In this document: positions 2,156-32,642 of the stretch, one piece after another
Numbering within the stretch: position 1 is the stretch's first letter
Layout: every line of letters begins with the position of its first letter
Source of the DNA: Hyphochytrium catenoides
Lineage: Eukaryota; Protista; Hyphochytriomycota
Length of the DNA stretch: 34,868 nt
Assembly (NCBI GenBank): GCA_900088475.1
Contig: FLMG01001271.1
Span: forward strand, 1-34,868
Direction of reading: 5' to 3'
The notes under the pieces: model-generated
The model's input: the letters and a program-made list of their open reading frames with translations, nothing else
The model's database searches: none
Told to the model about the DNA's origin: nothing
Position numbers and translations under genes: made by a program

Positions 2156-5100
2156 CTAGTCCACTTTGACCTTACGAGGATTAGGAATGTTGATGATGCT
2201 GGGGCCTGTCATACGAAGCACAAGCTCGGGCGAGCGCATGATTCGCACCAATGTCTCAAACAGCTTCACCTCATCACGGAGATGACCCACATAGGATTGT
2301 TCTCTCGCTATGTAGACTCCCTACACATGGAGAGCCATTTAGTACATCAGCCCTTAGAGCCACAGACAACACATGTAGAAATCCTCACCTCACACAAGTC
2401 CAGCAAAACGGTGGGGTCTGGCATCTCTTCATAGACAATAAATAGATACTTCTTCCGGAAGATGTTCCCAATAAAACCTCCGATCGTGAAGATAATCTGC
2501 AGAGCAGGCGTAGCAAGAGCCAAAATCAGCCACCCGACTAGTCAGAACAATTATGAAGTTACTTTGCTCACAAATATGTAGAGCGCCTTGTATCCATAGC
2601 CGCCTGCAGCCGTCGTAAGAGCCGTTGAGATTCCTGAAATCACATTGTCGGAGACCGTGATGATGCAAAGACCACGGTTGTCCGCCGATCCACAATCCAC
2701 TTTGGCTTGGGAGGAGTTCGTATCAAGCTGGGACGTGACGACCCAGAAAGTTTGGCCTGCTGTGCCAATGAGCTGCATAGTCAGCAGGTACTTGGCATAT
2801 CCTGGAGCCACAAATGCCGGGCCCTCTAGCGGGAGGCGGAGGACAGAGTCATAAATTTGACCAACTTGGAAGACTTCCGACTTAAACTCAGGTTGGTTTT
2901 GGCTCGCATTGATAGCAGACGCGATGGCCTTTTGGGTGGCCATATCTATGGCCCCGAAGAAGGTTTGAGAAATCTGTGGCAAGAGGTAGAAGAGGAAGGT
3001 TTCTGGGTCAGCTACTCTCCTTCTATCCGGTGATGGTTCAGTTGCCCCATGAAGGCGGCAAGTGGACACACTGAGGGGTACTACTTTGATAACTGCCACC
3101 TACCTCTGTGTTGCTGTTCGTGGGGTTGATGGCTGAGCGTGTGAAGGTGAACGTGACCAGCCAACCAAGGTCTAGCCCTTCCGCCAGACTCTTTACCAAG
3201 TAATCCAGCAACGGACGGCTGCAGAGATATTATTTGTCAGCTATGGACGTAAAAGAATGAGCGCAAAGATCAAATGTGGAGAAGGGCGTAAGACTTGGAA
3301 CCATCAAAAAGAAGTATAGACACTCTCAGACGCCTTGAAAATACAACGAACATTTCTTTGATAGTAGGTGAATCACAAACATATCCGGACCCACCTTGCA
3401 CCCCAGGCAGCCTCTGAGAAAGGTAGGAAGGCGATGGACTGAGCCACAGCGTCTACTGTGTCAGTGCGCGGCAAGCTCTTGACATCCTTAAGGTCAAACG
3501 CAGTGGTCATGAAAGGATAGGTGAGAGCTGCGCTGCCATTCCTGCCTAGTCCTATCTTCACCTCCGCACTGGTGACAGGGTTAGGGTCGTAGGATGGGTT
3601 CAGGTCGGAAAATAGGAGCAAGGGGAGGACCAAGAGAAGGACAAGGAAGAAAACTACGAGGCCTCCTTGTATAAACTTTGTGAGAAATGGCTGCTTCTTA
3701 TATCCTTTGAGAGCCTCATCTTCCTGCCTCTCCCTCATGTTGCACTTTTGAATGTAAAGACTTATGTAGATCTCCTCATGCAAGTTGAAAAGAGGGCGGG
3801 AAAGTGAAGTCTCCGCACAGACCCAGTTCAGCGTGCTGCTCAGCTCGAAAAAGAAAGGGATAGCCTGGCATATCTCCTGCCTCAACTTGGTCAACTCACC
3901 AAAGCCTCGACTGGAGCAACAAAAGATGGGTAAGAGTAAGCTCAGACCTCCCACAGCACGACACGAAGAAAGAGGATCAGTAATCACCCGTCACTATAAG
4001 GTTAGATTGGCAAAGCGGGACTGCGGAAAGAGAGACTTGACACCCAGTCAAAACACAGAGAGGTATGCAGGGTAGAGAAAGCAATGTTCTTCTTAGATCT
4101 CTGTGTACCTAGTGAGCAAACGACTATCTCCTGAAAAAACGGGATACCCATACTTTATCTGCAACGCTGACAGCCCCATGTAAGCAGCTTGGATGAGGTA
4201 GAACAGAGAGAGAGACGTCCTTTCCATTATCACCGTATTCACAGACGCTGGAAACCAGAAAAGGATAAGGAGATGCACCGCGAGGACGAAGGAATACTGC
4301 AGACAGAGCTTAATCCGCAATGACTGGTACAGCACCGCCACTCTAACAAACACATTGTGGTCAGTAGGAGAAATCGGACGAAGAAAGATAGACAATGTGC
4401 ACTCGATCAGAGTTTCACAATCAGTTTCATTCTCGCTGCCCGATTTTGCTTCCTCATGCAACATCCGCACTCCACCTGTTATTTCTCTCTAGGTCCTCGC
4501 TCATTTAGACCACAAAGACGACTAGACCCCACTATCTCACCTGTCGCCTATCATTAGCGCCACCTGCAGTATGCACAAGATCACCATGGATCCCGAGAAT
4601 TGAGAGGAGGACATACTGGAGGAGAGGCCATTCGTCTCTTTGCTGCCAATAGAGGAGAATAGAAAGACTATCCCAATAAGGGAGATACCCTGGACTATAA
4701 GGGTAGCAGAGTAGTAGCTCCGTCCTGGCTTTTGTCCATTCGCTGCATCCTGGATGTCGGAGTCCCACCGAGGTGGGACAGGCGGGATAATCCGGTTGAA
4801 ATAGGCAGAGAATGGCTTGGGAACCTTTGAGATGAAAGATAATGAGGTGGCCATCAGGGTCTACTAGTAGCTACTTCTGCCAGAATGGTCTTGAAGAGTC
4901 GAAGAAGAGCGCAAGTCCAAAGTAGATTGGCCAAAGTCAACAAAGTTCGTCACTTACAATTTTATCCACAGATTGCGGAAGTCCGTGAAGCTTCTTCCCT
5001 ACGCCTTGATCCACGTAGATCTATAAAATCTAGGCTTCAGTGTGACTTCTAACCAGCTTGTAGTATGAGATGGCAGTACCTGGCGGGTGTTATTGAGAGC

Positions 5101-8100
5101 TTGCATATTTCTCTTCTCCTCCTCATCGGTGATCACTTCCTTGGTTGACTCTTCTTTCTCAGTAACCTCACTAATTGTCTCTGCAGCTTTGCGAGCTGCC
5201 TCTTCCTCTGCTGCCTTCATGGCTGCCTTTCTGCTCTGCAGCTCCAAGGCGTGCGCGCTGTAGAACAGGACAGTCAGAATGACGAGACACAGGTGAACTT
5301 TTCTGTCTCCTGTGCCTAGAATGGTAGCACTTCGTCAGCTTTCTTCTTCAAACCTCAACATGTTTTAGCTCTCTACCCAGTGCCAAAGCCTGACCGACCC
5401 ACATCCTACTTACATATCAAGCATAACGTCTTGATCACTCAATATCGATTGGTTATCCTTTCCTTGTGAGCCACGAGTGAGCTGCTCAATGAGAAATGTC
5501 CGCCGCACAGAAGCGTCGGCAGTCTCCCAAAGACCCCGTACTCCCAGCTCGAAGCGGTGGTATACGAGGGAGAGGAAGAAGAGGAAGGTCCAAATTAAAC
5601 CTGAAGATGAGTTCCATTGAGTCCGTCAAATACTGATGACCAGAGAAGTACGGAACACTTTTGATTGACCAAGTGGGGCGTGAATAGCAGCAGAAGACAT
5701 AAGCACTGGACAAAGGGTGATCTAATGAAGAATCCAGCTGATGAGAGAGGACTTGGAGTCGTGGACAGAGCATATAGGAGATTGGCCTTTAAAGGCGTCA
5801 CTTCTCTTCGCGTCTCCCTACCTTCTGTTATTGAGGCTACGTTGTTAAGTGACCCGTCAAATTTATAGATTCCTAAGACCAGTAGGGGCTGAAACCTCTT
5901 TACATTGGTACTTTGCACAGTCAGAGATAGAGAGGGGCACCATGGCTGGATCGATGGGTAGAAGAACGCGGACCGGTCGATCTGGGCTGACTGGCAGAAA
6001 ATTGGGACTTGAAAAAGGTATTTCACAGATAGCGCGAAGATGGACTACATGGCAGACGAGCAACTAATTACTTAGACGCCTATCCATCAACCACATATCA
6101 AGCGTGTTTAGAATACGGCAGGAGAAGGAAGTCGCCCTTACCCATGCCAACAAAAACTTCCAGATCTTGACCTTAGGTCTGGGATTTTCGAAGCCAGCAT
6201 ACGCAAAAATAAGCATCACAGGAACGGTGCTGAGCAGATCTCCTTGCATAGCGAACGACAACGCTGCTGCAAAACAGCAGAGAAGCGATGACCAGCCACG
6301 TAGAATGTTTACTAGTATAGCAGGCAGCTCCAACCAAGGAAAAATGGTGGAAGAGTTCTCATCTGGCCTCTTACTCTCATCACGTAGGACTGGGTCCTGC
6401 TGACGCTGCAACGAGGGAGCAACAGTTGGAGTTGAGCATTGTTACAAGTCTGAGGAGATAAAGGTATGGGAAACGACGTTGAATAGAAGAAGAGCTAAAG
6501 GGGGAACCAGCAAAACCTCCTCCTTGGCAACAATAGGAAAGAAAGCAGCATACGAAGGAAACGACGACGGCTTTATGAGGCAGACAAGAAGAGAGGGAAC
6601 TGTTCAATAAGACTCACCCATAATGCTGCATAGTAAGGAAACCACCACGGCAGCTCATCATCTTCTTTGTCTTCGTCATCCATCATCCAGCTCTCAATGG
6701 AGCCAGCCTCACTACCCTGCTCTGACATTTCGTCGTTTTCTGTCGTCTCACCACCATTCTGTTTTCACGGGTGCAGATGCGAGAAAAAGTGAGAAGAGGA
6801 GCATAATATAGTCGCTATTCCATTGAATAGCTGTGAGGAGAGACGGCGGTACCGTGTGTTCTACTTAGACCTAAGACGTGAATCTCATCCAAGGCAGGGA
6901 GGGCTAAGGCGATGGTAAAGCCCAAGTCTCAGTACACAACCTACCGCTCTAATATGCTCTTCCAACCTCTCTTGGAGCGTTGCACCCACAGATTTATTTG
7001 GCGTGTTTTGCAGAAAAGAAGAAATCCATTTCTCCTCATCTTCTTCATCCGCTGGCTGGAATTCGTACAGGTCATAAGGGTGTCGACCTCTCCTCAGCTT
7101 CAGAACGAAGCGCTGCAGTTGTGGCCTCCCATCCTCCAGTTGCACACGTTCAAGAGGGCGCTCAAGGCTTATTACGTCCCCATGGTGGAAGGAAGTAGGC
7201 CAGTGCCTCTTCCGGCGGCTTGACCTGAGGAGTCAAAAGGTTGACGAAGTCAGCTTTTGCTCTACATGGCCTAGATTCCTCAGGCATAGAGATAGAGATC
7301 TCTCTTTTTGTCGCTGCTGTCTAGTTCAGACCGGTCGCTTATCCATAATGCCCAACTTTCCTCGCACCTGTGCTTCGCAGCAACCCTTTCGTTCTTATAG
7401 TAAGATAGACGCCTCCGATCAGCAACAACGTAGCGCAAAAGGCATCGTTTGCTCTCTTTCATAAAGAAAAAGTGCCATGGTCGTTTGTTTGTCTGACTCG
7501 GCAGAAACCGTCAGTTAGTGGAGTCGTGCATGGGAGTATTCGAGCAGATGTACGCAAGCAGCCCTTTTCGTCCGGTGTATCTTTCCCCACATCTCCTCCT
7601 GTTGAACACTTTCTTTCCACTTGAGATCGGCCGTCGCTGTCTGCTACTCCTAAGTTGGAGATGCCCAGTTGCTCATAGACCTCCAAAGGTAGCCTTTTTT
7701 GTATTACTCACCGCTTTCCTCGTAATTCGCATCCACCCAGCGGTGACATCAGTCCCAAAGTCGAGTGGCGCAGTCGTAATGGGTGGCGATGGAATAGAAA
7801 AGGGACCCTCTCCGTTTCTGTTGACAGCTGAGACCTTGAACTGGTATGAAGAGGCAGGATGTAGCCCATCAATCGTTAGCGCGGTAATGTGGCCTATAAG
7901 GTGAGACGTTAGTTTTCTCGCTGAGATTGACAAACGGTTGAAGTCTTTCTGCTCCCTCCAATCAGTGTACCTGGCACTTCAATCATATCGTCATAGTCAC
8001 CCAATAGAGTGAGTGAAGGAACCTTCTGCTGCACAATTCTGTAGGCTTTGATCCTTAGGCCGCCGTAGCTCTCCGCTGGCTCCCATCGTAGCTCCACAGA

Positions 8101-11100
8101 GTGCGCTGTAGCGTTTGATGCACGAGGATTCTTCGGAGCGAGAGGGGGTAGCGAGAGATTCAACCCGATAGCGACATCAAGAAGCTCCGACGTCACGTTC
8201 AGGGTCTACGACACAGCGCCATAAAGGACGGGAAGGCAGTAAAGAGACACAACGGTCAGTTATCCTCATTGGCAGTTAAGATATCTGCTCTTTATCAGAG
8301 AAGAACGGATTGAATTGATACTGAGCCATTCTTGACCTACCCTTGTGACAACTGTCTTGAGCTTGAGGATCATAGCCCCCTTCACCTTGTGCATACGCCA
8401 CCACCTCTCAAGCCTGTCCGTATATTCCACCTTCTCGCTCAATTCGAACCTCTCATTCCGCTCCTCCCGCAATCGGTCCAAGTAGTGACGCATGTATCCA
8501 TATTTCTGACTTCTATACAGTTCACTCTGTACTGAAGCAAGAGCAAATATGATAATTGAAGCCCACGGCAATTCAGTACTGCCACTCGAAGTCTGAGACT
8601 GAGAATAAGGAGAAGTGAATGCCGCCCCTGGATAGTCCACGGGATACTTCACCAATCCCAGCAGGTTGCCCGCTGAAAGACAGGCGCCACCCATGTTGGA
8701 GTCATTGGTCCCTAACGTAAACGCACCCGCAGGGAAGTGGAGACGGAGCGCCAATTAGGTTTAAGCGCAGGAGCGCCAAAGGTAACTCAGAGGTCCAATA
8801 AATGACCGAGGTGCATTAAGAAAGCTGGGAAAAACTTAAGGAACGATAGAGAAGTGGACCACGGTACGGGGGAGAGGAGACAAGAAGGAAGAGTCAGGAA
8901 GAGTAATAAGCTAAATGGACTCTCGATATGACTTACCTATCACACACTGTTGCTTCGCTGCTGAGATTTCGATCGCAGGAAACTGGTACACAATCATGGC
9001 AAACATCTGTGTCCAATTAACCGCACGCAAACTCGCAAACACCCTAGTTCCTCCTCTGGATAGGTACTCCGAGCAGCAGAAGAAGACCACGGAGACGGAG
9101 ACATACAGCAGCGAGAAGAGATTGGCTTGGCTGCAGCCTGCAGCAAACGCCACCACCAGAACAATGTTGATGAAGAGCGCGAAGCAAAAGAAGGAAATCC
9201 AATGGAACAAAGTACGATTGTTGCCGCAGGTATAATCGCCTGGATCTCCAGGGAAGAGTTTCTGGCAGATGGCTTGAATTGTGCGCAAACGCTAGCCCAG
9301 CAAAACAGTCAGTTAGCCCCAACGGCAGGAATTCAAACGGCCAGGATCTAGCAAGCTCCCAAGAGCCGTTATCTCTTGTTTATCGAACACCGCAATCTTC
9401 AGCGTACCTTTCTGGATCATTTGTCCCCCTACCTATCCCTGCTAACGGTCTCCCTCTGCTAGCGGTCAGTCCTACACCATCAGGTATTGCTCGCAACTGC
9501 TTACCTTCACAGCGGGCTCCATAAGCCCGAATTGATCCGCCTCTTGCATCATCGGAGCCAGTGCGAGGGCATCCAGGGTGACGCCATAATGCCTTGCAAT
9601 GCTCTCATGGGCCCTCAATTCTGCCCAATAGTACGGGAGGTATTAGCGAATATAAGCGTTATGTGGGAGAAACGATAATACGGTGTCGGTCCTTCTCCAT
9701 TAGGTTTCCAGCCATCTCTTCCTCGAGACAGGCGCGACTACTTCTCTACTAGTCCGTCACTACATCTGCTCCTGATCAAAATTGCTGTCCAACTCCCTGC
9801 GGACAGATCTCCCTTTCTCCCTTGAGCCATTACGTACCTAGCTCTTCATAGAGCTGACGCAGTTTCCAAGCTTTAGGGATCATGCCCACGACGAAGAAAA
9901 CAGCTGCATCAGATAGGAGTTGCCACGGTGAACCATACCCCAGGCCGCCAATGCCTGTTAGACCAAGGGAGACAAGGTACAGATAAGATTTTAGTGAAAT
10001 CAATGTCAGAGGAATTGAACATTCAGAATTCAAGTGAGGGAAGACGTATAGAGAAAAACAGCGAAAAGGCTGCCTTCGAAAACTCTTAACCTACCGAACC
10101 AATACTGCCAACTGTTAGACAGCACTCTCCAGGGCCAGTAGCTCTGTCTGTCGGCTCCCAAAAATGGGGGAAATCCAAGAAAGGACCCGTACTGGGCTAT
10201 CAAACTCAGAATAAGCACCAGCTCAAGCCACCACCATCCGCCACGCACGAGAACTTTTCTCGGAGTATATATCAGAAGGACGACAAGGAGCATGTAACAT
10301 AGAGAAAGGAAGGAGAGGTGTACAAAGGACGAGACGACCAGTCCCACCAGCGTTAAGATGGTGAGAGCCCGGATCATGATGCGGACGTACGCTAGCCGCC
10401 AACGCCAAAAGGATGGTTCGACGTCATAATAACTAAGACCTCGACCTTCCTCAGCGGAGTCTCTCCCTTTGCTTGTGGGAGTTGCTCCCTCTTCACCCCC
10501 ACGGCTTTGTCTGTCTTTGTAGCGATGGTCTTCCGCTTCATGAAAAACCGTTTCTCCAAACTCTACAGCTCTCCGATCCTTCAGAGGTATTGGGTCACTT
10601 CTTCCCTCGGATGCAATGCTGTCCCTTTGCGAGTCGTTCGCCCCAAAGGCACTCGTTCGAATACGAGTGCTTTCCCTGTCCGTACTTCCACTTATGCGTT
10701 CACTTAGGCGTTGAGAGGGTTCCTTACGTCGTTGATCTTCACTTTCTGTTAGGCTCCTTACCAAGGACTCTCGAAGCACTGTACGGAAGCCCTCGTCGGA
10801 AGTGGGCAATGGTCTCCACGATGAGCCTTTTGCCCCGACTACCTGAATGGAAAATTCCGACATTTGGCCAGAATAACGGGCCGTTCCCGTCCCCGACGCC
10901 CCAAGGTAAGATCCTTTGCTCCCTCTTCCCATATCCAATTCGGGGACTTCTCGGCGCGATGAGGCACTAGCGGCATCTGATTCTCCAGGCAGGCTTTCTA
11001 TCGCGCTGTCAGCAGCCATGGCGGAGTTCATCTCAGCTGCCCCTAAACAAGCGAGAAAGTTGCGCGAGATCAAGCAAGTAAAATAGACGACGGCCCATGA

Positions 11101-14100
11101 GGACGCTTAGTTAGCCAATCCCAGTAAAGAGTAGTCGGGATATTATACGTACAAAACATCTTCTGTTTCACGCTGAAGGTAAGGGCAGCCTCAAGGGCCT
11201 TCAAGTCTTCAGCCTCAAAGTCCCGTTGGTAGATCTGGGCCCTGGAGAGACAGCAGAGAGTAGTTGAGAGGAAAGCAGCAAATTGAAAGTAGTAGGCAAG
11301 CAGAAAGGAGGGGAACTATGCTCGAAGAGAGGAGGCTTTAAATAGCTAGAGGTTTGACAGTGCATAGACTGTGACGCTGGATCAAAGTGGGAGATGCTTT
11401 AAGTCACGCGGGACATGGCAGAGCAAAATATAAAGTATCCTACCATCTTTGGATGCTACAGCAGATGGTCACGAAGGTGTGATAGCGCAATACCCGCCAC
11501 AGGCCATCTCCATCCTCCTCAGCCCTGATGAAGCCCCACCATGAAGCAGAAGGACCAGCAGAGAGAAAAGAATTGCCAGGTGCGAAGAAAGACAGCTGGA
11601 AGCAATATAACGCAAGAGAGAGCAAAGAGGAGAGGAGAAAATAAAACCACCAAATGGCATCCCATCGCATTGTGGGGATGACTATGAAGGCGTAGAGCCC
11701 GTACACAGAGTTAGCTACTGAAATTTGGCTGACACAGGCAACCGCCGCCAGTGCTAAGGTCAACTTAGAAGAATGGAGAGATAGCATTCTTTTGCCAAGA
11801 TGGACGAGATAGAAGAACCCGAGGCGGATGCTGTCGAAGACCTTCTTTAGAAGGAGGTTTGACTCTTCTTCCACGGCATCCTGCAGGAAATGGAGGAAGC
11901 TCTATTAGTGCAAACACCCAGGAAGTGCCAAGTAAACAGGGAAAGCAAGGGCTACGGAAGACAGAGAGTATGCATTTCCGAGCGCATGGAAGCCCAGAAC
12001 GGGAGCCAAAGCTGTGTGAAGGAGAAAAAAAGAGTCTATTACCCTGGGAGGACATGATTGCTGCCCGTCGACGGTTTGTGGCAGTGTATGGGTACTTTGA
12101 AGAGAACGAATATTCTGCCCTTGTATAACCGATACTAGGACCACCTGCATTAGATGATGTGAGTATGCACCCTGCTATCCAGCTCTTGGTAGAAGACCAT
12201 GGGAAAAGAAGGAGGAAAGGGACGTGCATCATAGCAAGGTGACCTAGGGCTAGGGATTCAGACGGCAGGGGTGTCAATGAAGCAACTAGCAAGGGACAGG
12301 CAGCTTGAGGCGCAAAACCGTAATCATACACTTAGCAGCTCGAGATCCACTTACCGCGGTCGTAGGGAAAAGGCTGACAAAGAGTGAGCGTGTGGGGAAG
12401 ACTATCAACCCTATCTCGACCAGTGTTATCCAGCGGTTAAGTGGCTCCCATAGGTCGAGAAGAGCAGTGTTTATTGCAGGAAACTGGTAGATATATTGCA
12501 TACACAGGATCAGCACGTTGGTGAGAACGATGGCCCGCCAGACGTTAAGCTCCAGGGTATTGCATTTCTCGTAAAATCTGTCAATAGAGACTGGTTAGAC
12601 CAAAACATGTCAAGACGGGGATTGACAGGAGACATATGTACAGGAGTCAAAGCGGAAGGGAACACCGCCACCCTCAAGACCACGGTAGGAGGAGAGTGAC
12701 AACTCCACCACAAAGCACAGATTAGCCTCGCAGCCCCATAACGGCGCCTTGATATAAGGTGCACGAGTGCCTATGAGGTAGATCAGGAGGGGCTGGTCAT
12801 ACCATACCTTTTGACCCCTAGAAGATACACCCAAATAGCAAGGAAGCAGAAGAGGAGCTGGATGAGTCCCACTACTGTCACTGTCCGTCCTGGAATCATC
12901 GGATCCTCAGGACCTTGAGGCTGCTGGGTAGGACGCTGGTACCAGACCGCGACTGAATAAAAGACAGAGTAAGAAACCGGCCTTCCAATGAACGAGTAGC
13001 CGCGCCAGATTAAGTCTGATAGAGAAGAGAGATAGAACCACGGCGCGGGAACAAGGGCTTGTGTTTGGGGATTCTGCTGACGCTGCTTCTTGACGATGAT
13101 GATCTGCAGAAGCCGCTGCGCCTGGGCCTACATTTTGTTGAAGCAACGGCGCGGCGAGTGAGTGCAAAGCCATGAGAATACTTCTCGAAGACAGCGAGCC
13201 CGAGTCCTTCTGAGAGCCGAGGACGCTATTCACTCTCCATTGAACGTCCTTACCAGGATCAGCACTGCCACTTGAATCATGTACTCCGTACTCCAGAGTC
13301 GTGCCCAATGGGAGATGTTCTTGTCAAAACAGACCAGGCCCATTGTGGTAAGGGTTGTTTGCTCTTCTTCCGCTGTGTTCTCCGAGCAGACCAGATTCCA
13401 AATGAACACTAAGAGACAGGCAAGGGAGGAGTACCAGCAGAGAAGAGGCCATAGGAAGACGCGAAACTTGGGATATAGGAGCACAAAGGCAAGCATCACA
13501 ATGTAAGCTGTTTGTAGAACGCTGACACTGGCTGCGAGCACGAGTACGATCATGCACAGAAGGAAGAACAGGTCCGTGTTCCGCATTATCACGCTTTTCG
13601 CATCCTCAAACCATATGGAGAAGGAGGATGGCTGGACTCTATCACTCTGCTGCGATGAGAGCTGCATCGTACGCAAAAGAAGTTTAAGGAGGAGGTGGAA
13701 GAGAGCAGTAGTAAGTAAGTGGCAATAGGTCAGCTGAGATGGCATAATAAGATGATTGCTGCATTGAAGAGCCACCTTTCAGGAGATGGACATATCATAC
13801 AAGCGACAAAACGATGGTGCATTGTTGCCATCCACCAGATGTCGGTGATGCCCACGCCCGCCAGCATTCATCCCTTTCTTTAGTCTGTCTTCCTTTGCTG
13901 CCTGTCTCTTCTCTCCTCATTCTCTAACCTCTTCTGCCTTTTCGCTCTCTCGCTCTTTCTTCTCTTCTTCTTCCCTCGACTGCCTCTTCTCCCTCTCTCG
14001 TTCTCGCTCCTGGCTTCTTCACTAGGGGATTCGTGGCCAGCAGTCGTCACTCTTCATCGCCAGCCTGTTGCTGTTCTTCCTCCTCTTCTGTGACCATGAT

Positions 14101-16925
14101 TAATCATCCTCGCACCCAATCTCTTCTTTATCCTTTCGCTGTGCCTCTGTATTCTTTCGCTGCGCTGACCCACTAAATAAGGTACTTCCTACGGTGCGTG
14201 ACACAAGCACTTACCGGTGCGTATTTCGGCGGCGTTCCGGCGACGCCTACTTCAGCTCCGGGAGCGGCAGCCTCCGGCGCCATTGTTCTGGGCGCTTCTT
14301 CGCAGTCCTTTGACACGACAGTATTCCATACCTCAAGCATTGCATAGTAACGCCCGCTCGTGAAGCACAGGTATGCAAGCAGAAGATTAAGGAGGAGTTG
14401 CACCCCGAGCTCCAGAGCTCCGTACTCGAATACGGAAACCTCCGTCTTGTCAGCCCACTTTCGTACCGTCTCCTCTGCGACCCCCAGACTTCCCTCCGAC
14501 ATCGCAAGAAGGTTAAAGGCATATTGAATAGAGATAAAGAACCATCCGTAGGCGAAGGCCAGCAGGTAGAAGTAAGGAATCCGCAAGATTCCAACGATGT
14601 TGATTCCAATGAGGCCCCAAGATAATAGAGGAATCGAAAAAAAGGATGGATATGAGACTGCCCATAACATGAGAACGACGCCAATGAGGAACACTGTGAC
14701 TTTCTTTACAGCAAATCTTCCCTCCGGAAAAGGTACTGGCGGCAGTATGTCCTCATTCTCCATCCTCTTGGAACGCTCCAGGCCTCCGGACAGGACTGGA
14801 TGTGGATGATCAGTAGCATCCCCCACGTGCAGTCCGGGTTGATCTAGTAAGGACGACCGAGGAGCCAAGGAGAAGGGACCCATCTTGTCTCCTCCTAGAC
14901 TCTCCCCTTGCCTTCTCAAACGACCAGAGGGGGTGACGTTGTCCAAAGGGAGCGAGAGCTGAACCCCCAAGAATTTTCCGGAAGATTGTCGTGGGGTGTC
15001 AAATGATCGGAAGCGACCTCCTGGAGAAGGGCTGCCCACTGGAACCTTTGGAGTCGTAAGAGAGTAAGGAGGACAGGGTAAGCCACGAGACTGAGAAGAG
15101 TGGACAGGCAGGACGGTTAGATGAGGGCTCGGCCTAAAGAAGGTGCAAGAACACATATCAATGTAAGTTGGCCGGGATGGCATAAGGCGTCGCTGGCTTT
15201 AATCTTAGCTGATGAGAAGAGAAGAGAAACACTTCGTCTCGGCAAACCTAACAGCCAAATTCAACTAAGAAGGTACCTTCGGAGTAGGGAGAGACCCGTA
15301 CTCAGAAAACCTCAATTTAGATTGAGGAGATTGGGGCGACAGAGAGAGCAGTCGCCCTTCTCCTCCCTCCGGGTCCGAGGCTCGGGGAGTGAAGTTGTGA
15401 CGAGGTCCACGCCAGAGCACAATCGTCGACTCAAAGATGACCAACTGTCCAGCAAAAAGAAGGTACAGCCCCCAGCTCTCCGGAGCCTACATTATTAGAA
15501 CGGACATCAGCACATCAGCCTATTTAGAACAAAAAAGCGCTACACGGATATGCTCGAGCGAAGGTTCTTTTTCTGGAGAAGTGAACCAAAATGACAGCAG
15601 CTTTTCTGTTCTCTTGCTCATTACTAACGTACCGTGGGTAGAGATGCTAGGCCTAAAATGCCTCTCAGAGCTTCTACAGTTGTCCATCGAGTCACTGCTG
15701 GTATCTGGAAAAAGTAGCTGTCGGAACGTGAAGTCCAGTAGAAGTGGTAGACAGGTGGCATAAGCACTTAAGTCAGTTCGTTTTCAAATGTAAACTAGGC
15801 CAGAGAAAGCCCTTCCACTTACCATATCACAAATGCAGTAAGGTTGAGCCCAAACAGGAATAACAGGAACAAAGGAGAGAGCGGTATACTCTCCAAGAAG
15901 GACCCAAGAAGCCTGCAACGAAGCTGTAGGACTCTGGAGAGGAGCGCCAAGAATGCACCATAGTAGGTGAGGCAAAGGAGCCCTGGCTGCGCGACAGAAC
16001 ATAGAAGAAGAGAGAATAGAAGGGCACAGGATGTGCCCAGAATACGACTGTGACTGATATCTCCTGTCTCCCTGCTGACATAGTGATGCATCCTACATCG
16101 TCTCTTTCCTTCTGTTAGAGACCTTGCTGGATGCAGGGATGTGGTGTACAAAGGGGATGCGGCGAACGTAACATGACGGGCCTTGCGATAGTGCCAGCCC
16201 GTGAATAGAGAGGAGAAAGCAACAAGAAGATCTGGTAGTACTAGCCAGCTGAGCCCTCCCCATAGCCCTAGCTCCTCAGCGCTAAACCCAAGCCAGTTAA
16301 GACTTGAAGGTATCGAAGTCACTGCTTGCAGCTCGGCGTAACCCTAAGCAGCAGAAGAGAAGAGTGGGCCGAAAAGTAAGAGATTTGGAGAAAGATGAAG
16401 GGTTCATTGCTTGAGAAGGAAAGAGGGAGCATGTTAAGGGATATCCTTCTCTAAGATATCAGCCCATGTAATGCAGGACAGAGATCAGAGGAAAGCAGGG
16501 AAGGCCAATGAGGCAGAAGAGAGAACGAGGGAATTAAAGGACCTAGAGAAGTCAACGCGAAGGCCTTTCTTTTGTTCGTCACGTACCTGGAAGACGATGT
16601 GCAAGATGAGCAATGTAAAAGAGACCAGGAGCGTGAGCCACGCAAGAAATGGACGAAGATGGGGCCGTAAAGCATCGAGGACATACGCCCCAATATATAT
16701 GTACGAGAACCCAATAGGGCGCGTTGCTATGGCAAGCAGTAGAGAGAAAGGAAAGATGATGTTGACTGCTCTGCATAGAGTGGGGGAGAAGCAGGATGAC
16801 GAGGAGGATGGAGATGAGAGAGGCTCAGGCTCTCTCTCTCCTCCTTCTCGGCTGAGCCGATGGAAGGCTCCGGATGCCCAGGGATGGCCAACGGACGGCC
16901 TCCCCCTGCCGTCGTCCGTGACCAT
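2156..16925 (-). CDS. PIEZO: Piezo-type mechanosensitive ion channel (multi-exon) with an inserted FN3 + PH cassette
   Basis: PF(x2)E(x6)W anchor motif PFFFELSSTLNW (3823-3858), then EEIYISLYIQKC, outer helix KFIQGG...LVLPLLLFS and PNPV. Inner helix GYGYKALYIF|IIFTIGGFI. The spliced C-terminus YEEMPDPTVLLDLCE|GVYIARE...LFETLVRIMRSPELVLRMT ends at a TAG (plus 2156-2158). Repeated 4-TM units carry Piezo motifs (LHIVFQ, LHSSKL, LGFPP..YWPW, NPRP..W..KYLFQ, LQVALMIGDR, LSALQIKYGYP). ATG at 16925. Junctions checked are GT-AG; not every exon boundary was resolved. Confidence 0.96.
7005..7745 (-). other. Pleckstrin homology (PH) domain within Piezo (three exons)
   Basis: Spliced AGWMRITRKA|TNKRPWHFFFMKESKRCLLRYVVADRRRLSYYKNE...KHR|SSRRKR...FVLKL...LYEFQPADEEDEEKWISSFLQ. 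It shows beta1 G-W, RY(V/F)V...LSYYK and a C-terminal helix with the conserved Trp. Introns are 7493-7711 (GTGAGT..CAG) and ~7225-7367 (GTGCGA..CAG). Confidence 0.85.
7775..8148 (-). other. Fibronectin type III domain within Piezo (two exons, intron 7894-7970)
   Basis: Spliced PPLAPKNPRASNATAHSVELRWEP..YGGLRIKAYRIV...VPG|HITALTIDGLHPASSYQFKVSAVNRNGEGPFS..S. This matches the FN3 consensus (P.AP..., L.W.P, Y.I, L.P...Y.F.V.A.N..G.G..S). Confidence 0.93.
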
Positions 16926-17218: not shown

Positions 17219-17254
17219 CAGACAGACAGACAGACAGACAGAGAGAGAGAGAGA
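17219..17254 (+). repeat. Compound microsatellite (CAGA)n(GA)n upstream of Piezo
   Basis: cagacagacagacagacagacagagagagagagaga, read directly. Confidence 0.9.
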
Positions 17255-18421
17255 GGGAGACCTTATGAAGATCGCCAGACGGAGATGAGGGGCCTGGTGG
17301 ATAGTGCGATAAGAACAAGGTGTGCGCTCTGCTTCTCTGATCATACCAAGGCAATGAGCAGCAGCAGCAAGCAGCAGCAACGCGCCTCCCTGATCCTTGG
17401 AAGAGATAGGCAGATGGTGCTCCAAGACAGACTGAAGGAAAGACAGACAGAGGAGAATGACTGACGAGTGAGGGTTTCTTACTTTAGTATAAACAGTAGA
17501 AAAGTGAGTGTATGGAGAGGAAGAGACGGAGAGAGATACAGCTTCTGGGAGGGGATAAGTTGAAGGACGGCGGCAAGGAGCCAGAGCATGGCGTTTGGCC
17601 CTGCTCCCTCCTCTCCCTCCTTCCCACACTGGCCCAAAATCACCACACCCGCCCACAACACGCTCTGTGCGTAAGACCGCGTAATGCCTCTGTACGGGCC
17701 TCACGAATATCGTACGTTGTAGTATCCCACCTAACCCAATAGGGTTGAGTTCTTTTGTTATTTACCACTTTGTACTGTTTAACCCACCATGAAACCCATA
17801 ACGAAGTGAAGAACGCCGTCGATGGTAGAAAAGTTTGATTCCCACAGCAAAGTCACATCGAGAATGAGTCTTCAGCTGGACAGCACGGAGGCTTGAGAAA
17901 GGCTGTCAGTCTCACAGTCCGAGTACATTTTATTGGGCTTCCATCCTTCCAAGGATCAGAAGCTCAAGAGTTCCTTCAGAAGTTAAGAAGCTATCGCCAA
18001 GTGCGCAGTCACCCTTTGACGCTTCAATAAGGCGTAGAGAGCGAGTAGGTCAACGGGAGTGCATATCTAGAGGATGGGGGAATGCGGGCAGCCTCCTCCT
18101 ATAATTCCTGGCGCCGTTGTCATCGCAGGTCTTGAGTCCTGAAGGAAAGTGGTTAAGGTTGATGGCTAGCTCATGCAGAGCTGGCACGAAGGTGGTCATC
18201 ATGTGGTGTCGGCGTATCTCTGTCGCAGGAGGGAAGATAGAGGTATGGCAAGAAGAGAGACAAGAGAGTTTCGGAAGATAACAGAGAATAGCTATCACTA
18301 GAACTTCTCAAGCCCTCCAGTTTCAAGCCAATAAAGATTATAGCACTGGCTGTGTTAGACAAACTGGTTCCTTATCATAGCGCTAGTCATACTTAAAAGG
18401 CTGTTATTCCCTTTCATCTGT

Positions 18422-21400
18422 CTACTTGAAGGCATTAGTTGCGTTTGGATCCCACTCGAAGGGCTCAGGAGCCGCAGCATCTTCCTCCTCCGCTGGCTTC
18501 TTGGCCCTCATCTCCACCAGCTCCTCAGGTTCTTCAGGCTTGCTATCAACTACCACGTTGATGCCGAAAGGTGTCCTCTGTGGATAATGATTAGGCAAGA
18601 GTTTGCTAAAGTAAGCATAAGGCACATATGACGTAAGAGCGACCTAGTGTTTAGAATGTCATGGACTTCTAAGGACCACATGATAAGAGCGACATGGGAA
18701 AGAAGGATCATACCACCCGGAGACTCACATCTCTAATGACTGGTTGATAGCGGCCACCCGAAGTGAAAGAGCATAGCTTCGACTGTGATAGAGTGACGCG
18801 GGATGGATTTTTCAGGGTGAAGGAGGTCGGCTCAGGCTCCTTCTTCTTCCTTTCTTTTTTCTCTGCGCTGGGCTGAAAAAGTTCGGACAGAGATGAGACT
18901 GGAGTTATGCCCGAGAGGTAAGCTGCAGAGGAGTTAGAGTAGTAGGCAACCGTACCTCTTCCTTCGCTTCCTTCTCCTCTGCTTTTGTCTCTCCTTCAAC
19001 CTCCATGCTCTCCTTCGTCTCCTTCTCAGGTGGAGCAACCCCAGCCTTGGCCTATCAGAGTGCTGACTAATCAGATATGGCCATAACAACACAACGACAG
19101 GAACTCAGCGGACAAGCACTAAGAGGCACATATCCCATCCCAAGAACTGAGCTTAGAAGCGAGAATGGGAAGAGAGAAATGGACGTCACCTGCTCTTCCG
19201 CCTTCTTATGCGCTTGTTTTGCCTTCGCTCTTGCAGTGGTTGAAAGAACAGCCTGAGTGACGACTGCCTTCTTCTCTTCCTTCTTTTCCTCCAAAGGTTT
19301 AGGGTAGGCAAAGAGAGATGGACGAGCACTGCAAGTGACAGTCACTGGGGATGGCATCTTGAGATCTTTGTTTACCGCAATCGTCATAGTTGGCTGGGGG
19401 GAACAGAAGCAGGAGGAGGCTATGACTGAGGACAATGCAGTAGGAGGATAGCAGAGGGAAGTCTAGAAGAAAGTTGAGATGTACAGGAAAAGTTAAGGTT
19501 CAGAGATGACATGCTCTATGGCAGACCTGACATCGTGGCAGTCAATGAGAGAAATAGCTAGGAGAGAAGAAAGTCCTTGTCAAGGATATGGCGGCATAGC
19601 GGAGGCCAGTGTTTAGTGTCTATCAGAACAAAACGAGAAGGGCAATTGCAACGAGTTGCCTCGACAGTAGCACAATGGGAAGAGATCAGAAAGATGCTAG
19701 GAAAGTAATCCCCTCTTTACCTGAAAAGCCAGCGCAATAAAGTGGTGCAGAGGGTACCAGAACCAGTACTGAGCCCAAAGAGCTAGCCCGACCACCGAGC
19801 TCATTTTGGTGAAGCCTGCCCGGGACTGCAGCGAAACGACTACGTTTCTGCCTCCTGCATCCACAAGCCCACAGGCGATGATAGCACCCATCTTGGTCAT
19901 TGTGCTTTGGTGCTTATCTGAGACCACCTACGATTGCAAGGCGAAGCAAAGTGTGAGGATTGTTGGAAGATCGGAGACAAACATGAAAACAGAAAGTCTG
20001 CAAGCCACCACCGAGCTGGGCACAAGAGACCAAAGGTGTGAAACGTACTATAATCATCGCAGACCATCTTGGTGACTAGTCCGCGTAATTGAAGAACAAT
20101 GAGAGATGGGAGTTCACCTCACCTTCAGAAACTTCTCCTTGAAGGTCTTGACCTTAGGATTTCTGGCCTCACTCTCCTGCATGATGACCATGGCAAGTGC
20201 CATCATGGCTCCCTGCCTAACGTAATCCACGGCGTCATCAAGCATCGGCTCCAACAGCGCAATGGCCTCAGGTCTGGCAGTCCCTGCACACGAAATAGCA
20301 ACGGCCATGCAAGCTCCATAGCGAACGTGCGGATTGAACGACTCTGCCAATAATGAGACAAGATTCGGGACCTGGTAGACAAGCGAAGAACGAGACGTCA
20401 GTTGCAAGCATAAGGATAGACGCCCACATGCGCCCTGATACGCAAAAAAAATAAATCTGAACAAAGCACTTAAACAGCACTCACAGGCAAAAAAAGAGAG
20501 CAACAGGGAAAATTCCGCACAACAAAGAGATAGACTGAGGAGACACAACCAGCTTTGAGTTGATGAGAGCATTTCACCTTCTTACCTGCTCTGAAGACCT
20601 GAACAGAACGAAGCCTAGACATGTGACGGCTGCCCTTCTGACATCATCGTTGACATCGCTCACTGCGACATGCAGAAGCCGCCGAATAGCGCTGTTACTG
20701 CTGGTTCCTACAAAGGCCAGGCCGATGGTATACATAGCTCCATAGCGGATAATAGGGTCCTTGTCTCTTGTCAGTTGCTCCACCAAAACGTCACTCTCCT
20801 CTTCTCGGCCATACATAATCAGGGCAATGCCAAGGGCGACTGCCCTGATGATCTTTTCGTGCTTTGTATCATGGGCATACGAAATGAGCTCGCTGATAGC
20901 TGTGCGAGACAGCTCGGTGCTCTGACCTTGCCCGAGAAGAAGAAGGCCAATTCCCAAGCCTGCCGCTTCACCTGTGGCAGATTGGCGATTGAGAGACTAA
21001 ATAGGCAGCAACACAGTGAAAGGCAGACAATAATCGTAGAGAGACACGAACACCGACCCTAACCTTTGAGAAGGCGAACTAGGCCAACAAGGTAGGAGAC
21101 CAACCAGCTAAGATAAGGTAAATGGATCAACTCACCGGCCACGGCGCTGTCTGTGTAGAGTGTATTTTTGAGATCTTCGTACAGCTCTTCGTTTGCTGTG
21201 GCCATTGCAGCCAAACCCAAACCCAGGCAGGCACCGTGTTGCACCACTTCCATCGTTCCAGCGTTACGAAGGGCATTTTGAAGGTAGGTGATCGTTGTTC
21301 CATGGCCTGTTTTAGAGCATACAAGATAGAGGAGTAACAGCCACTATGTAAGAATCACCCGCTCACTCAATAGAGTTGCCCCAAAGAACAGAAGTAAAGC

Positions 21401-23764: not shown

Positions 23765-25506
23765 GCTGGTGGTGGTGGATCGCTTCGTTAGTTCTGACGA
23801 TGCAAACGGCAGCGTAACGAAGAAGCGCCGCTAAGAACAGGTGTGGTCTCGTATCCAAAGGACCCTCCTTGGTCAACCCCACTTCAATATCCTTCCACTA
23901 TGGCGGAGTTCCTATAATACCGTCTTTCAACGACTTCTCTTTCGTCTACCACGAGGCACTCTTTCGGTCTCTGCTCCGTGATGACTTTATAACCGTCCTA
24001 CTCATCTCGCAGTTCACCTCTACGTTTTGAAGATCCTCGATATCTTCTTGGTTGCAGGCCCGATAATCGCTCTTCAGACTCTGTCGCAGCGGCGAATCCA
24101 AGCGGCAAAAGGGCGGAAGTCGAAAGAAATCCGGCGATCTTCCCCTAGCGTGCATTCTGGATAGGAGGCCAGAGGTATGGCCTCTATTTAGGCAAATATC
24201 TTCAATGATCAAGCTTATCCGTGATATGCTATAGTACTTGGCAGGTACTTGACAATTACATTACAAGTACACGTAGAACGTACCGTAGTAGGGTTTTGAT
24301 AGTTACCTACTTGTTGTTTGTACTTGATATTTGTATGATTTGGTACTTGCGGTACTGGTCATGAGGATTTTGTTGAGGAATCATCATGATTAGGACGTTT
24401 TCTCTTCGTTTATCCTCATCAAGATAGAGCTCTCTTCTTCTTCTGCTGGGGCTAGCGATGAAGGAAGGATAATAATAATTCAAGGAACTGTGAGTGGAGC
24501 TCTTTTGCCCTCATTATTGGGACGATCTCTGTACCGTCGTCCTGCTGCATACTACATCCACTACACGAAGGAGGAGGAGGCAGCGGTGCTGGCGCGGCGG
24601 GGGACTCTTCTTGCCATCCATCATCATCATCGTCAAGTTCTAAAGTAATAGGAGGAGTGTAACTCTTCTATATACCATCATCTGCAACAAGGGGCAGAAG
24701 AACCATTTTATAGAGGAGGAAAACAAACAAATGTGACAGAAGGAGACCACGAACGCAAGAACAGCACTGACCGATTAGCTATATGGCTGTCTGATTTTTT
24801 CAAATTTTCGCGTTTGATAATCAAAACGTAGAACTCATCCATCGATTTTCTCATTGTAGAACACCATTTACCAGAAATACATGCCGGAAAATTAGAAAGA
24901 ACGCATTGCTTGGGGTAACTTTCCCTTGCACACCATATGTAGAATCCACCCCCACCATCAATATTACTATCTATTAGGGGTGTCCTCTACCTATGTAGCC
25001 AGAGATGTCCGAGCCGCTTGACTTCACTTTAACGGCTGTTGGTTCTCGGCAGCGCGGAGACTCATCTTCATACTTTCCACCGCAACGCCAAAACCGGAGA
25101 AAAACGATTTCTTGGATTCACATTTCAAAGTTCAGCTCCGCGGGTTCTGACCTCCTGAATTCTGACTCTTCGTCTCGGCTCCCATCATCAAGGGATAGAG
25201 CCAGCGCTATCCGTGTTACCTGCTTGCTGTCTTCAGCGGGCGGTGCTCAATAGTGGATGATCGACAAGCATTAAGTGTGAACCGTCTTGAGATCATTGAA
25301 GCGCAGGAAGCGCTGTTCCCACCCTTCTGTGGTCTTGCTTGTGTCCCTTTGGCATTCACGGAGGGCAATAAAGGTGGAAGTGTGTCCTCTCTCTGACTGT
25401 AAATTGGACGTGTTGATCCTTACCTGCTTCTTTTTGTCTTAGAATTCTGGTGTGAGGAAAGAACGGCATTTTCGATCGAAGCTTCCGGACAAGGGCTAAG
25501 CGTAAT

Positions 25507-32524: not shown

Positions 32525-32642
32525 NNNNNNNNNNNNNNNNNNNNNNNNNNNNNNNNNNNNNNNNNNNNNNNNNNNNNNNNNNNNNNNNNNNNNNNNNNNN
32601 NNNNNNNNNNNNNNNNNNNNNNNNNNNNNNNNNNNNNNNNNN
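32525..32642. other. Assembly gap (N run)
   Basis: Run of Ns between the coiled-coil gene and BRAP2. Confidence 0.98.

What the first reader, a model, noticed from the sequence alone, without database searches (positions are those of the whole stretch)
6945..8204. Piezo channel with a fibronectin type III + PH domain cassette spliced in directly after the beam
Seen in sequence: the pre-beam TM unit ends LPWASIIIFALASVQSELYRS and continues into the beam helix (YLDRLREERNERFE...KLKTVVTR). It then splices in phase 0 (AGG|GTAGGT 8341/8340; TAG|ACC 8204) into TLNVTSELL, an FN3 domain and a PH domain. From there it passes via EEHIRA|NGGETT...YAALW|RQQDP into the THU8-like unit (LLCCF...NPRPKVKIW). 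Every junction checked is GT-AG and in frame, so the cassette is part of the channel rather than a neighbouring gene. Established: animal Piezo1/2 carry the latch/lateral plug and a largely disordered loop here, with no folded FN3 or PH domain. Intracellular FN3 domains bear force in titin-type proteins, and PH domains bind phosphoinositides or small GTPases. Inference: a Piezo with a built-in cytoplasmic tether or force-bearing module and a lipid sensor on the lever beam, implying a different gating or regulation system. I cannot tell whether this architecture has already been catalogued in other stramenopiles or oomycetes.
Basis: partly seen in the sequence, partly recalled or inferred. Interest (0 to 1): 0.88.

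Follow-up and report, generated by a model that had tools for sequence, protein, structure and literature searches.

The report
Piezo channel with built-in FN3–PH module
The window encodes a Piezo-type mechanosensitive channel carrying a folded fibronectin-III plus pleckstrin-homology module inside its chain just after the lever "beam"; this is real, but it is the standard, database-catalogued (though unstudied) architecture of all oomycete Piezos rather than a one-off.

Summary
One coordinate is off by one: the exon starts at 8205, not 8204. The spliced 547-residue product aligns end to end, as a single HSP, with 34 Piezo proteins (E to 3e-92).

- **FN3:** shown directly on the two window exons by Pfam, and by AlphaFold/Foldseek on an orthologue.
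- **PH:** not detected by Pfam on the split window pieces. It is established by an orthologue-only profile (E 1e-28), by PF00169 hits in 30 of 34 orthologues, and by a confident model matching AKT, anillin and ArhGAP9 PH domains.
- **In-chain status:** in Phytophthora infestans DNA, one uninterrupted 1308-codon frame carries the flanking transmembrane helices, beam, FN3, PH and linker. The module is therefore part of the channel.

The novelty claim falls. Every oomycete Piezo retrieved (about 40) has this module, UniProt names them after it, and one Plasmopara annotation spells out the combination. I found no paper discussing it. Animal, plant and ciliate Piezos lack it.

The window's copy branches outside the sampled oomycetes, so the module is older than that group. 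Function is inferred only: a strongly basic PH followed by a strongly acidic linker at the pore-proximal end of the beam.

The parts
8341..8711 (-). Exon encoding the last helix of the pre-beam transmembrane unit (TM28-like, 8571-8515) and the first ~48 residues of the beam helix (from 8484).
   Evidence: AG acceptor at 8713-8712 and GT donor at 8340-8339. The exon aligns to the oomycete orthologues. An orthologue profile aligns to mouse Piezo1 1017-1328, ending in the TM28-to-beam transition.
8206..8340 (-). Phase-0 intron (135 nt, GTAGGT...TAG) lying inside the beam helix.
   Evidence: It contains 3 in-frame stops and has lower GC (44%).
7971..8205 (-). Exon: end of the beam helix (8205-8149), then the N-terminal half of FN3 (from ~8148).
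   Evidence: Pfam fn3 profile positions 2-41, E 7.5e-4. The AF2 helix runs to residue 61 of P0005:1416-1799. Coordinates.
7712..7893 (-). Exon: C-terminal half of FN3 (to ~7757) and the first strand of PH (GWMRIT motif, from ~7747).
   Evidence: Pfam fn3 profile positions 27-82, E 4.4e-8. 49-60% identity to orthologues by tblastn. PH profile positions 2-18 map to 7744-7694.
7368..7492 (-). Exon: PH strands 2-3 (RYVV.D...YYKNE) and the start of the conserved polybasic loop.
   Evidence: PH profile positions 14-57, E 3e-11. Alignment A2.
6945..7224 (-). Exon: rest of the polybasic loop, PH strands 4-7, the C-terminal PH helix with its conserved Trp (7046-7008), and a short post-PH helix.
   Evidence: PH profile positions 54-131, E 1.4e-8. 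Alignment A2. Coordinates.
6618..6758 (-). Exon: acidic, Ser-rich linker (47 residues, net charge -14), ending in a conserved Trp/Tyr-rich pre-THU8 helix.
   Evidence: Orthologue linker profile E 2.4e-10. Charge analysis. The equivalent part of the orthologue model is disordered.
6142..6405 (-). Exon holding the start of THU8 (transmembrane helical unit 8). The 3' end of the exon was not fixed precisely.
   Evidence: Pfam THU_Piezo1 E 2.7e-8 on frame 6067-6441. tblastn to P0005 residues 1796-1886.
2159..6044 (-). Rest of the channel core in several exons: THU8 continuation (6044-5820), THU9 and anchor (4845-4540, 4353-4129, 3876-3397), cap (2973-2389) and the C-terminal domain up to the stop (2320-2159).
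   Evidence: Pfam Piezo_THU9_anchor E 2.9e-21 and 1.4e-15, and Piezo_cap E 3.6e-6. Colinear tblastn to P0005 residues 1887-2773.
8937..14910 (-). Upstream Piezo blade exons (approximate; the gene start lies further upstream, below about 18.3 kb). Exon boundaries were not refined.
   Evidence: Colinear tblastn hits to orthologue residues ~450-1440. Pfam Piezo_TM1-24 on 12289-12594.

Best explanation
**What it is.** The region is the middle of a single, intron-rich Piezo gene on the minus strand. It is the orthologue, in a lineage branching just outside the sampled oomycetes, of the 'oomycete-type' Piezo. In that subfamily the cytosolic loop between the beam and THU8 is not the animal latch/plug/clasp plus disorder. 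It is a fixed series:
- the end of the beam helix;
- one FN3 beta-sandwich;
- one PH domain with a conserved polybasic loop (K-H-R-S..R-K-R..T-S-F);
- a short helix;
- a strongly acidic, Ser-rich disordered linker;
- a conserved aromatic helix, then THU8.

This much is shown.

**How it most likely works (inferred).** By homology with solved Piezo1, the C-terminal end of the beam lies under the central pore module. The trimer would then hold three FN3-PH modules at the cytosolic pore exit, where animal Piezos place the latch and lateral plugs.
- The very basic PH (net +14 here, median +10.5 in orthologues) most likely docks electrostatically on acidic inner-leaflet lipids.
- It may alternatively, or in addition, dock on the acidic linker that follows it (net -14 here, median -11 in orthologues).
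- Lipid composition or phosphorylation of the linker would then set how the beam end is held, and so tune gating or ion exit.
- FN3, the best conserved segment, would act as the rigid spacer or docking surface.
For: **One chain**
- The open spliced frame aligns as a single HSP with 34 orthologues.
- P. infestans DNA has an uninterrupted 1308-codon frame (L001 3018-6941). It covers P0037 residues 630-1933: transmembrane helices, beam, FN3, PH, linker and the start of THU8.
- A metagenome scaffold shows the same in one ORF.

**Folds**
- Pfam fn3 on the window exons.
- fn3 in 36 and PH in 30 of the 39 rows of alignment A1 (34 orthologues and 5 window pieces).
- The AF2 model of the beam-FN3-PH region has pLDDT 85.4 and pTM 0.70.
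- Foldseek matches titin Fn3-56 and Robo3 FN1 at target TM 0.82-0.88.
- The PH-only model has pLDDT 86.5. Its listed matches at E <= 0.001 were all PH or closely related PTB domains, led by AKT1, anillin, PLEKHA7 and ArhGAP9 PH.

**Position**
- An orthologue profile aligns to mouse Piezo1 1017-1328, up to the start of the beam.
- THU8 follows the module.

**Conservation and charge**
- FN3 is 48.5% identical between the window and the orthologues, against about 27-32% for the flanking segments.
- The PH is basic and the linker acidic in all members.

**Distribution**
- All oomycete Piezos retrieved carry it. The animal, plant and ciliate Piezos listed do not.
Against: - There is no transcript evidence for this organism.
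- The window's own PH was not recognised by Pfam on its split exon pieces, and its spliced sequence could not be folded.
- The fold evidence therefore comes from a 35%-identical orthologue and is carried over by alignment.
- The canonical (K/R)-X-R phosphoinositide motif at the start of PH strand 2 is incomplete: only the Arg before the aromatic residue is kept. Specific phosphoinositide binding is therefore not indicated.
- No trimer model was made, so placing the module under the pore rests on homology with Piezo1 geometry recalled from the literature.
- The functional part has no experimental support in any organism that I could find.
Confidence: 0.8

Rival explanations
1. Gene-model artefact: the FN3 and PH exons belong to a separate or nested gene, or the long frame is a chance read-through of neighbouring genes.
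For: There is no RNA evidence here. Pfam found no PH on the split window pieces.
Against: The spliced product is colinear and gap-free against 34 orthologues across both junctions with the transmembrane parts. Intron-poor relatives encode the transmembrane helices and the module in one uninterrupted frame. Antisense frames have no domain hits. Composition matches the rest of the gene.
Confidence: 0.02
2. Facultative cassette. Exons 8205-6945 total 822 nt (274 codons) and are flanked by phase-0 introns. They could be skipped in frame to give a module-less isoform, loosely like the mammalian Piezo1.1 splice form that lacks the plug and latch.
For: The exon lengths sum to a multiple of 3, and both flanking introns are in phase 0.
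Against: Relatives cannot skip it, because it lies in a single exon. It is among the best conserved parts of the protein. Skipping would also remove the last ~19 residues of the beam helix. Phase symmetry alone is weak evidence.
Confidence: 0.08
3. Tether or adaptor model. FN3 is a force-bearing link and the PH binds a protein partner, such as a small GTPase or the cytoskeleton, rather than lipid. The module would couple the beam to intracellular structures.
For: FN3 is the most conserved segment. The closest solved folds include intracellular titin FN3 domains. The canonical lipid motif in the PH is incomplete. Foldseek hits include GTPase-linked PH domains such as ArhGAP9, ARHGAP21 and Dbs.
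Against: A single FN3 joined at both ends to the same polypeptide is not in series with any external load. No partner is known. The extreme positive charge of the PH and its polybasic loop are more typical of membrane docking.
Confidence: 0.15
4. Passive structural replacement. The module merely fills the space taken by the clasp and latch in animals, stabilising the beam and THU8 with no regulatory input.
For: The inter-domain model is confident (pTM 0.70), and the module keeps a fixed length across the subfamily.
Against: The conserved basic/acidic charge pair and the Ser-rich acidic linker look like regulatory features. Saprolegniales paralogue B varies the polybasic loop length, which suggests tuning.
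Confidence: 0.15

Closest known systems
Oomycete Piezo homologues, e.g. Saprolegnia parasitica SPRG_20361 (XP_012201597.1, P0005), Phytophthora infestans PInf_013599 (P0037), and a Plasmopara protein annotated 'putative pleckstrin domain, fibronectin type III, immunoglobulin-like, Piezo family' (P0034)
   Same: The order of parts is the same: blades, TM28, beam, FN3, PH with a polybasic loop, acidic linker, THU8, THU9-anchor, cap. The window aligns colinearly over about 2,200 residues. The charge pattern is the same.
   Different: Identity is only about 30-36% (up to 57% in short stretches). The window copy is intron-rich, whereas the P. infestans gene has roughly two short introns. It branches outside the Saprolegniales plus Peronosporales clade. 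Its FN3 is slightly acidic rather than basic.
Animal Piezo1/Piezo2 (solved structures 5Z10, 6B3R, 8YEZ, 6KG7)
   Same: The pore module (anchor, cap, C-terminal domain) matches at E down to 1e-42. THU7 and the start of the beam align to mouse residues 1017-1328. The beam helix has a similar length of about 60-65 residues.
   Different: The precomputed Pfam lists of the animal Piezos listed contain no fn3 or PH. From the literature (my recollection, not tested here), they have the latch, lateral plug, clasp and long disordered stretches in this loop. The listed animal and plant sequences carry other Piezo-family Pfam models (PF15917 or PF25288, with PF24871) that were not recorded for most oomycete-type sequences.
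Ciliate Piezos (Blepharisma stoltei PIEZO2_5, Tetrahymena, many uncultured; P0134 group) and plant Piezos (Marchantia, Ceratodon)
   Same: They have the Piezo core domains. In my trees they are the nearest Piezos lacking the module.
   Different: None has fn3 or PH, either in the precomputed Pfam lists or in my own scan at E <= 0.1.
Membrane-docking PH domains (AKT1, PLEKHA7, ArhGAP9, anillin)
   Same: The fold is the same: seven strands, a C-terminal helix and a conserved Trp. One face is basic.
   Different: Sequence identity is only 10-18%. The canonical strand 1-2 motif is incomplete. An extra short helix and a polybasic insert sit in the strand 3-4 loop.

Membership tests
Piezo mechanosensitive channel family | C-terminal pore module: THU9-anchor, cap (CED) and C-terminal domain | tested here: met
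   Pfam on raw window frames gives Piezo_THU9_anchor at E 2.9e-21 and 1.4e-15, and Piezo_cap at E 3.6e-6. The orthologue P0005 matches solved Piezo chains at E 1e-42 to 1e-27.
Piezo mechanosensitive channel family | Blade of repeated four-helix transmembrane units upstream of the pore module | tested here: met
   THU_Piezo1 E 2.7e-8 and Piezo_TM1-24 E 8.5e-5 on window frames. tblastn is colinear to orthologue residues ~450-2773. The number of units was not counted, because the full gene model was not built.
Piezo mechanosensitive channel family | Long cytosolic beam helix after TM28, before THU8 | tested here: met
   The profile alignment to mouse Piezo1 ends in the TM28-to-beam transition. 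A 60-residue helix is predicted at pLDDT ~90 in the orthologue, and the window aligns to it.
Piezo mechanosensitive channel family | Homotrimeric propeller giving mechanically activated cation currents | not testable with these tools
   This needs expression, electrophysiology or cryo-EM.
Fibronectin type III domain (PF00041) | Profile match and seven-strand beta-sandwich fold | tested here: met
   The window exon halves match profile positions 2-41 and 27-82. The orthologue-only HMM scores E 3e-38. The orthologue model matches titin and Robo3 FN3 at TM 0.82-0.88.
Pleckstrin homology domain (PF00169 / PH fold) | Profile match to PF00169 | tested here: inconclusive
   There was no hit on the split window pieces, and the spliced window protein could not be submitted. 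30 of 34 orthologues hit PF00169, best E 3.9e-8. The window matches the orthologue PH profile at E 1e-28.
Pleckstrin homology domain (PF00169 / PH fold) | Seven-strand sandwich capped by a C-terminal helix with a conserved Trp | tested here: met
   The orthologue model has pLDDT 86.5, and its top Foldseek matches are PH domains of AKT1, anillin, PLEKHA7 and ArhGAP9. The Trp is present in the window helix at 7046-7008. This holds for the window by alignment, not by its own model.
High-affinity phosphoinositide-binding PH subclass | K-Xn-(K/R)-X-R motif spanning strands 1-2 | tested here: inconclusive
   The strand 1-2 region is rich in Lys and Arg, and the Arg before the aromatic residue of strand 2 is nearly invariant. 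The position two residues before it is Leu, not a basic residue.
Oomycete-type FN3-PH Piezo subfamily | FN3 then PH between the beam and THU8, with a polybasic PH loop and an acidic linker, colinear with the members | tested here: met
   Single HSP to 34 members. The motifs are aligned and the charge pattern is shared. The window is sister to the remaining members in trees built without the module's residues.

The most novel reading that the evidence does not exclude
The FN3-PH module with its acidic linker is a self-contained electrostatic switch at the cytosolic pore exit. It would be the functional replacement, in oomycetes and their sister lineage, of the animal plug-and-latch. The basic PH would alternate between the inner-leaflet acidic lipids and the phosphorylatable acidic linker, gating lateral ion exit or setting the beam's pivot. 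This would be a lipid- and kinase-controlled Piezo with a mechanism not seen in animals. It would also be a clade-specific handle on mechanosensing in major crop and fish pathogens.
Probability: 0.2. Interest if true: 0.7.

Novelty: new member of a known kind. Interest (0 to 1): 0.42.

Why it matters
Piezo gating models rest almost entirely on animal channels. In those, the loop after the beam (latch, plug, clasp) is short or disordered and hard to study. Here a whole eukaryotic clade replaces that loop with two well-folded, easily expressed domains and a conserved basic/acidic charge pair.

- **A natural experiment.** It shows what the beam end needs in order to work. It also gives a tractable way to ask whether lipids or phosphorylation act on Piezo through this site.
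- **Age of the module.** The window pushes it back beyond the last common ancestor of the sampled oomycetes.
- **Practical angle.** The module is absent from the plant and animal Piezos retrieved here and present in every oomycete Piezo retrieved. It is therefore a clade-specific feature of a probable Ca2+-entry channel in organisms whose zoospore release and encystment respond to mechanical cues (PMC4820453).
- **What limits the interest.** The architecture is already visible in public annotation.

Tried and rejected
- **Pfam on the split PH exon pieces.** No hit. The spliced window protein has no reference, so it could not go to Pfam, structure prediction or database searches. Everything on the window's PH is by alignment to orthologues.
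- **Exhaustive representative search with the beam exon.** It gave only 6 hits, all at 39% identity or less. Neither the window's own protein nor any close relative is in that library.
- **Metagenome scans.** A scan with the window's FN3/PH exon found no relative.
- **Organism identity.** It could not be established. The conserved neighbour genes are split into exons too short for the length-limited protein search. I can only say that the gene branches outside the sampled oomycetes and that the genome is intron-rich, with about 50% GC.
- **Nested or antisense gene.** Rejected. Plus-strand frames over the region have no domain hits.
- **Recent insertion or horizontal transfer of the module.** Rejected. 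Its composition is similar to the rest of the gene, its introns cut through the domains, and it is conserved across the clade.
- **Literature.** Searches for Piezo with FN3, PH, oomycete or stramenopile found nothing on this architecture. The two most relevant papers do not mention it.
- **Foldseek on the whole beam-FN3-PH model.** It returned only FN3 matches, so a PH-only model was needed.

Full report
**1. What is in the sequence**

The region lies in a eukaryotic, intron-rich gene on the minus strand. The exons are 8711..8341, 8205..7971, 7893..7712, 7492..7368, 7224..6945, 6758..6618 and 6405 onward. Every junction is GT...AG. Each intron has in-frame stops, and the introns have mostly lower GC than the exons.

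Two small corrections apply. The exon after the beam exon begins at 8205, not 8204. The upstream acceptor of the beam exon is at 8713-8712, so that exon starts at 8711.

**2. It is a Piezo**

Pfam on raw open frames of the minus strand finds these models:
- THU_Piezo1 on 6067-6441;
- Piezo_THU9_anchor on 3376-3990 and 4096-4488;
- Piezo_cap on 2554-3099;
- Piezo_TM1-24 on 12289-12594.

tblastn with full-length relatives gives colinear hits. They run from orthologue residue ~450 at about window 14.7 kb down to the stop near 2159.

A profile of the pre-beam region of the relatives, with the window's pieces included, aligns to solved mouse Piezo1 (5Z10) residues 1017-1328 and to human PIEZO1 residues 1022-1326. 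The alignment ends in the TM28-to-beam transition.

**3. The FN3 and PH domains**

*FN3.* The two FN3 exons hit Pfam fn3 as complementary halves: profile positions 2-41 at E 7.5e-4 and positions 27-82 at E 4.4e-8.

*PH on the window itself.* PH gave nothing on the split pieces. The spliced protein has no reference, so it could not be passed to the tools. I therefore worked through orthologues.

*Finding orthologues.* An exhaustive HMMER search with the beam exon found only six proteins, all at 39% identity or less. Four are oomycete Piezos and two come from metagenome assemblies. They carry fn3 directly after the beam, and PH after fn3.

*Linking them to the window.*
- The spliced 547-residue window segment aligns as one HSP, end to end, with each of 34 such proteins, for example P0005 residues 1351-1886 at 35% identity, E 3e-92.
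- HMMs built from the orthologues alone hit the window's FN3 (E 3e-38), PH (1e-28), linker (2e-10) and beam (1e-7).
- The PH profile tiles over the three exon pieces just as the splice model requires.
- In alignment A1 (34 orthologues plus 5 window pieces), 36 rows hit fn3 and 30 hit PF00169.

*Structure models.*
- AlphaFold2 on the Saprolegnia segment (alignment A1) gave pLDDT 85.4 and pTM 0.70. It shows a 60-residue helix, an FN3 sandwich, a PH sandwich with a C-terminal helix, and a disordered acidic stretch.
- Foldseek matched titin Fn3-56 and Robo3 FN1 at target TM 0.82-0.88.
- A PH-only model (pLDDT 86.5) matched PH domains of AKT1, anillin, PLEKHA7 and ArhGAP9 at probability 1.00.

**4. 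The module is part of the channel**

In Phytophthora infestans genomic DNA, one uninterrupted open frame (L001 3018-6941, 1308 codons) encodes P0037 residues 630-1933. That stretch covers transmembrane helices, the beam, FN3, PH, the linker and the start of THU8. A metagenome scaffold shows the same in a single ORF. No splicing assumption is needed in those genomes.

In the window, the introns fall inside the beam helix, inside FN3, and twice within PH: after its first strand and after its third. The module is an old integral segment rather than a shuffled cassette. The helix in the model continues about 19 residues past the first junction.

**5. Distribution**

Searching with the module region of P0005 returned about 40 full-length oomycete Piezos. 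Genera include Saprolegnia, Achlya, Aphanomyces, Thraustotheca, Pythium, Globisporangium, Phytophthora, Nothophytophthora, Bremia, Plasmopara, Peronosclerospora and Hyaloperonospora. All carry PF00041 and many carry PF00169. UniProt names many of them 'Fibronectin type-III domain-containing protein'. One Plasmopara entry is annotated 'putative pleckstrin domain, fibronectin type III, immunoglobulin-like, Piezo family'.

Searching with the conserved C-terminus listed the same set plus about 90 animal and plant Piezos. None of those has fn3 or PH. The nearest outgroups in my trees, P0132 and P0134, also lack the domains. P0134's named relatives are ciliates, Blepharisma and Tetrahymena.

In maximum-likelihood trees the window's Piezo is sister to a clade holding a metagenome sequence, the Saprolegniales (two paralogues) and the Peronosporales. 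One of these trees was built with the module's residues removed. SH-aLRT support is 96-97. The window's branch is long, so its placement is not fully secure. The module therefore predates the common ancestor of the sampled oomycetes. Other stramenopile groups were not sampled.

**6. Literature**

I found no paper combining Piezo, FN3 and oomycetes, or any related combination. A review of oomycete calcium signalling counts Piezo homologues (one in P. infestans, three in S. diclina) without mentioning extra domains (PMC4820453). A survey of protozoan mechanosensitive channels is likewise silent (PMC3681921). The architecture is catalogued by annotation but, as far as this library shows, is not discussed.

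**7. Mechanism (inference)**

| Feature | Window | Orthologue median or mean |
|---|---|---|
| PH net charge | +14 | +10.5 |
| Linker net charge (exon 6758-6618) | -14 | -11 |
| FN3 identity, window vs orthologues | n/a | 48.5% (best conserved segment) |

- The PH also carries a conserved polybasic loop after strand 3.
- The linker is Ser-rich and is predicted to be disordered.
- By homology with Piezo1 geometry (established structures; recalled, not computed here), the beam's C-terminal end lies beneath the central pore module. That is where animal channels place the latch and lateral plugs.
- I therefore favour a membrane-proximal docking and regulatory module. The basic PH would engage acidic inner-leaflet lipids and/or the acidic linker, and so set how the beam end is held.
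- The canonical high-affinity phosphoinositide motif is incomplete. Specific PIP recognition is therefore not indicated.
A single FN3 joined at both ends to the same chain is not in series with an external load.

**8. Verdict**

The novelty claim fails, because this is the normal and already annotated architecture of oomycete Piezos.

The window adds a divergent, intron-rich member from outside the sampled oomycetes. Moderate interest remains because a clade-wide folded module at the beam end is unstudied and experimentally tractable.

Noticed in passing
window 6945-8205 (-): The four module exons total 822 nt (274 codons) and are flanked by phase-0 introns. Skipping them would keep the reading frame and give a module-less Piezo isoform. 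This has no support beyond the arithmetic.
   Followed up: partly
window 7375-7200 (-), across the 7367-7225 intron: A conserved polybasic loop sits inside the PH domain (K-H-R-S-S-R-R-K-R-H-W, then T-S-F). It is nearly invariant across the subfamily as K-H-R-S.K.R-K-R.K-T-S-F. It looks like a basophilic kinase site or a membrane-binding patch. Saprolegniales paralogue B lengthens this loop by 10-30 residues.
   Followed up: partly
window 10033-11106 (-): A 358-codon open exon of the same Piezo gene encodes a long Ser/Arg/Glu/Gly-rich, apparently disordered loop ahead of conserved transmembrane helices. The loop part has no counterpart in the oomycete proteins by tblastn.
   Followed up: no
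window ~19000-23200 (-): The neighbouring gene is the 26S proteasome regulatory subunit RPN2, with hits to RPN2_C, PC_rep, HEAT and RPN2_N. It is split into many short exons.
   Followed up: partly
window 27732-28381 (-): Exons of a proteasome subunit gene (PF00227; alpha-type by my reading of the sequence) adjoin a 46-base run of N (27544-27589), which is an assembly gap.
   Followed up: no
window 25456-26601 (+) and L002 12882-14624: A 382-codon open frame with a weak homeodomain hit lies about 7 kb beyond the upstream end of the Piezo gene. In the metagenome scaffold that carries the related Piezo, two homeobox (KN-type) genes sit just downstream of it. This is probably coincidence.
   Followed up: no
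window 34180-34647 (+): An open frame with BRAP2 and RING-finger domains, suggesting a BRCA1-associated-protein-like E3 ligase. It runs towards the end of the window.
   Followed up: no
window ~17220-17260 and 32525-32642: A (CAGA)n/(GA)n microsatellite lies just upstream of, or inside, the 5' part of the Piezo gene. A second assembly gap of 118 N is at 32525-32642.
   Followed up: no
P0134 relatives: More than 70 distinct ciliate-like Piezo proteins were retrieved. Most sit on contigs of about 9 kb, barely longer than the gene. That is consistent with gene-sized macronuclear chromosomes of uncultured ciliates. All lack the FN3-PH module.
   Followed up: no
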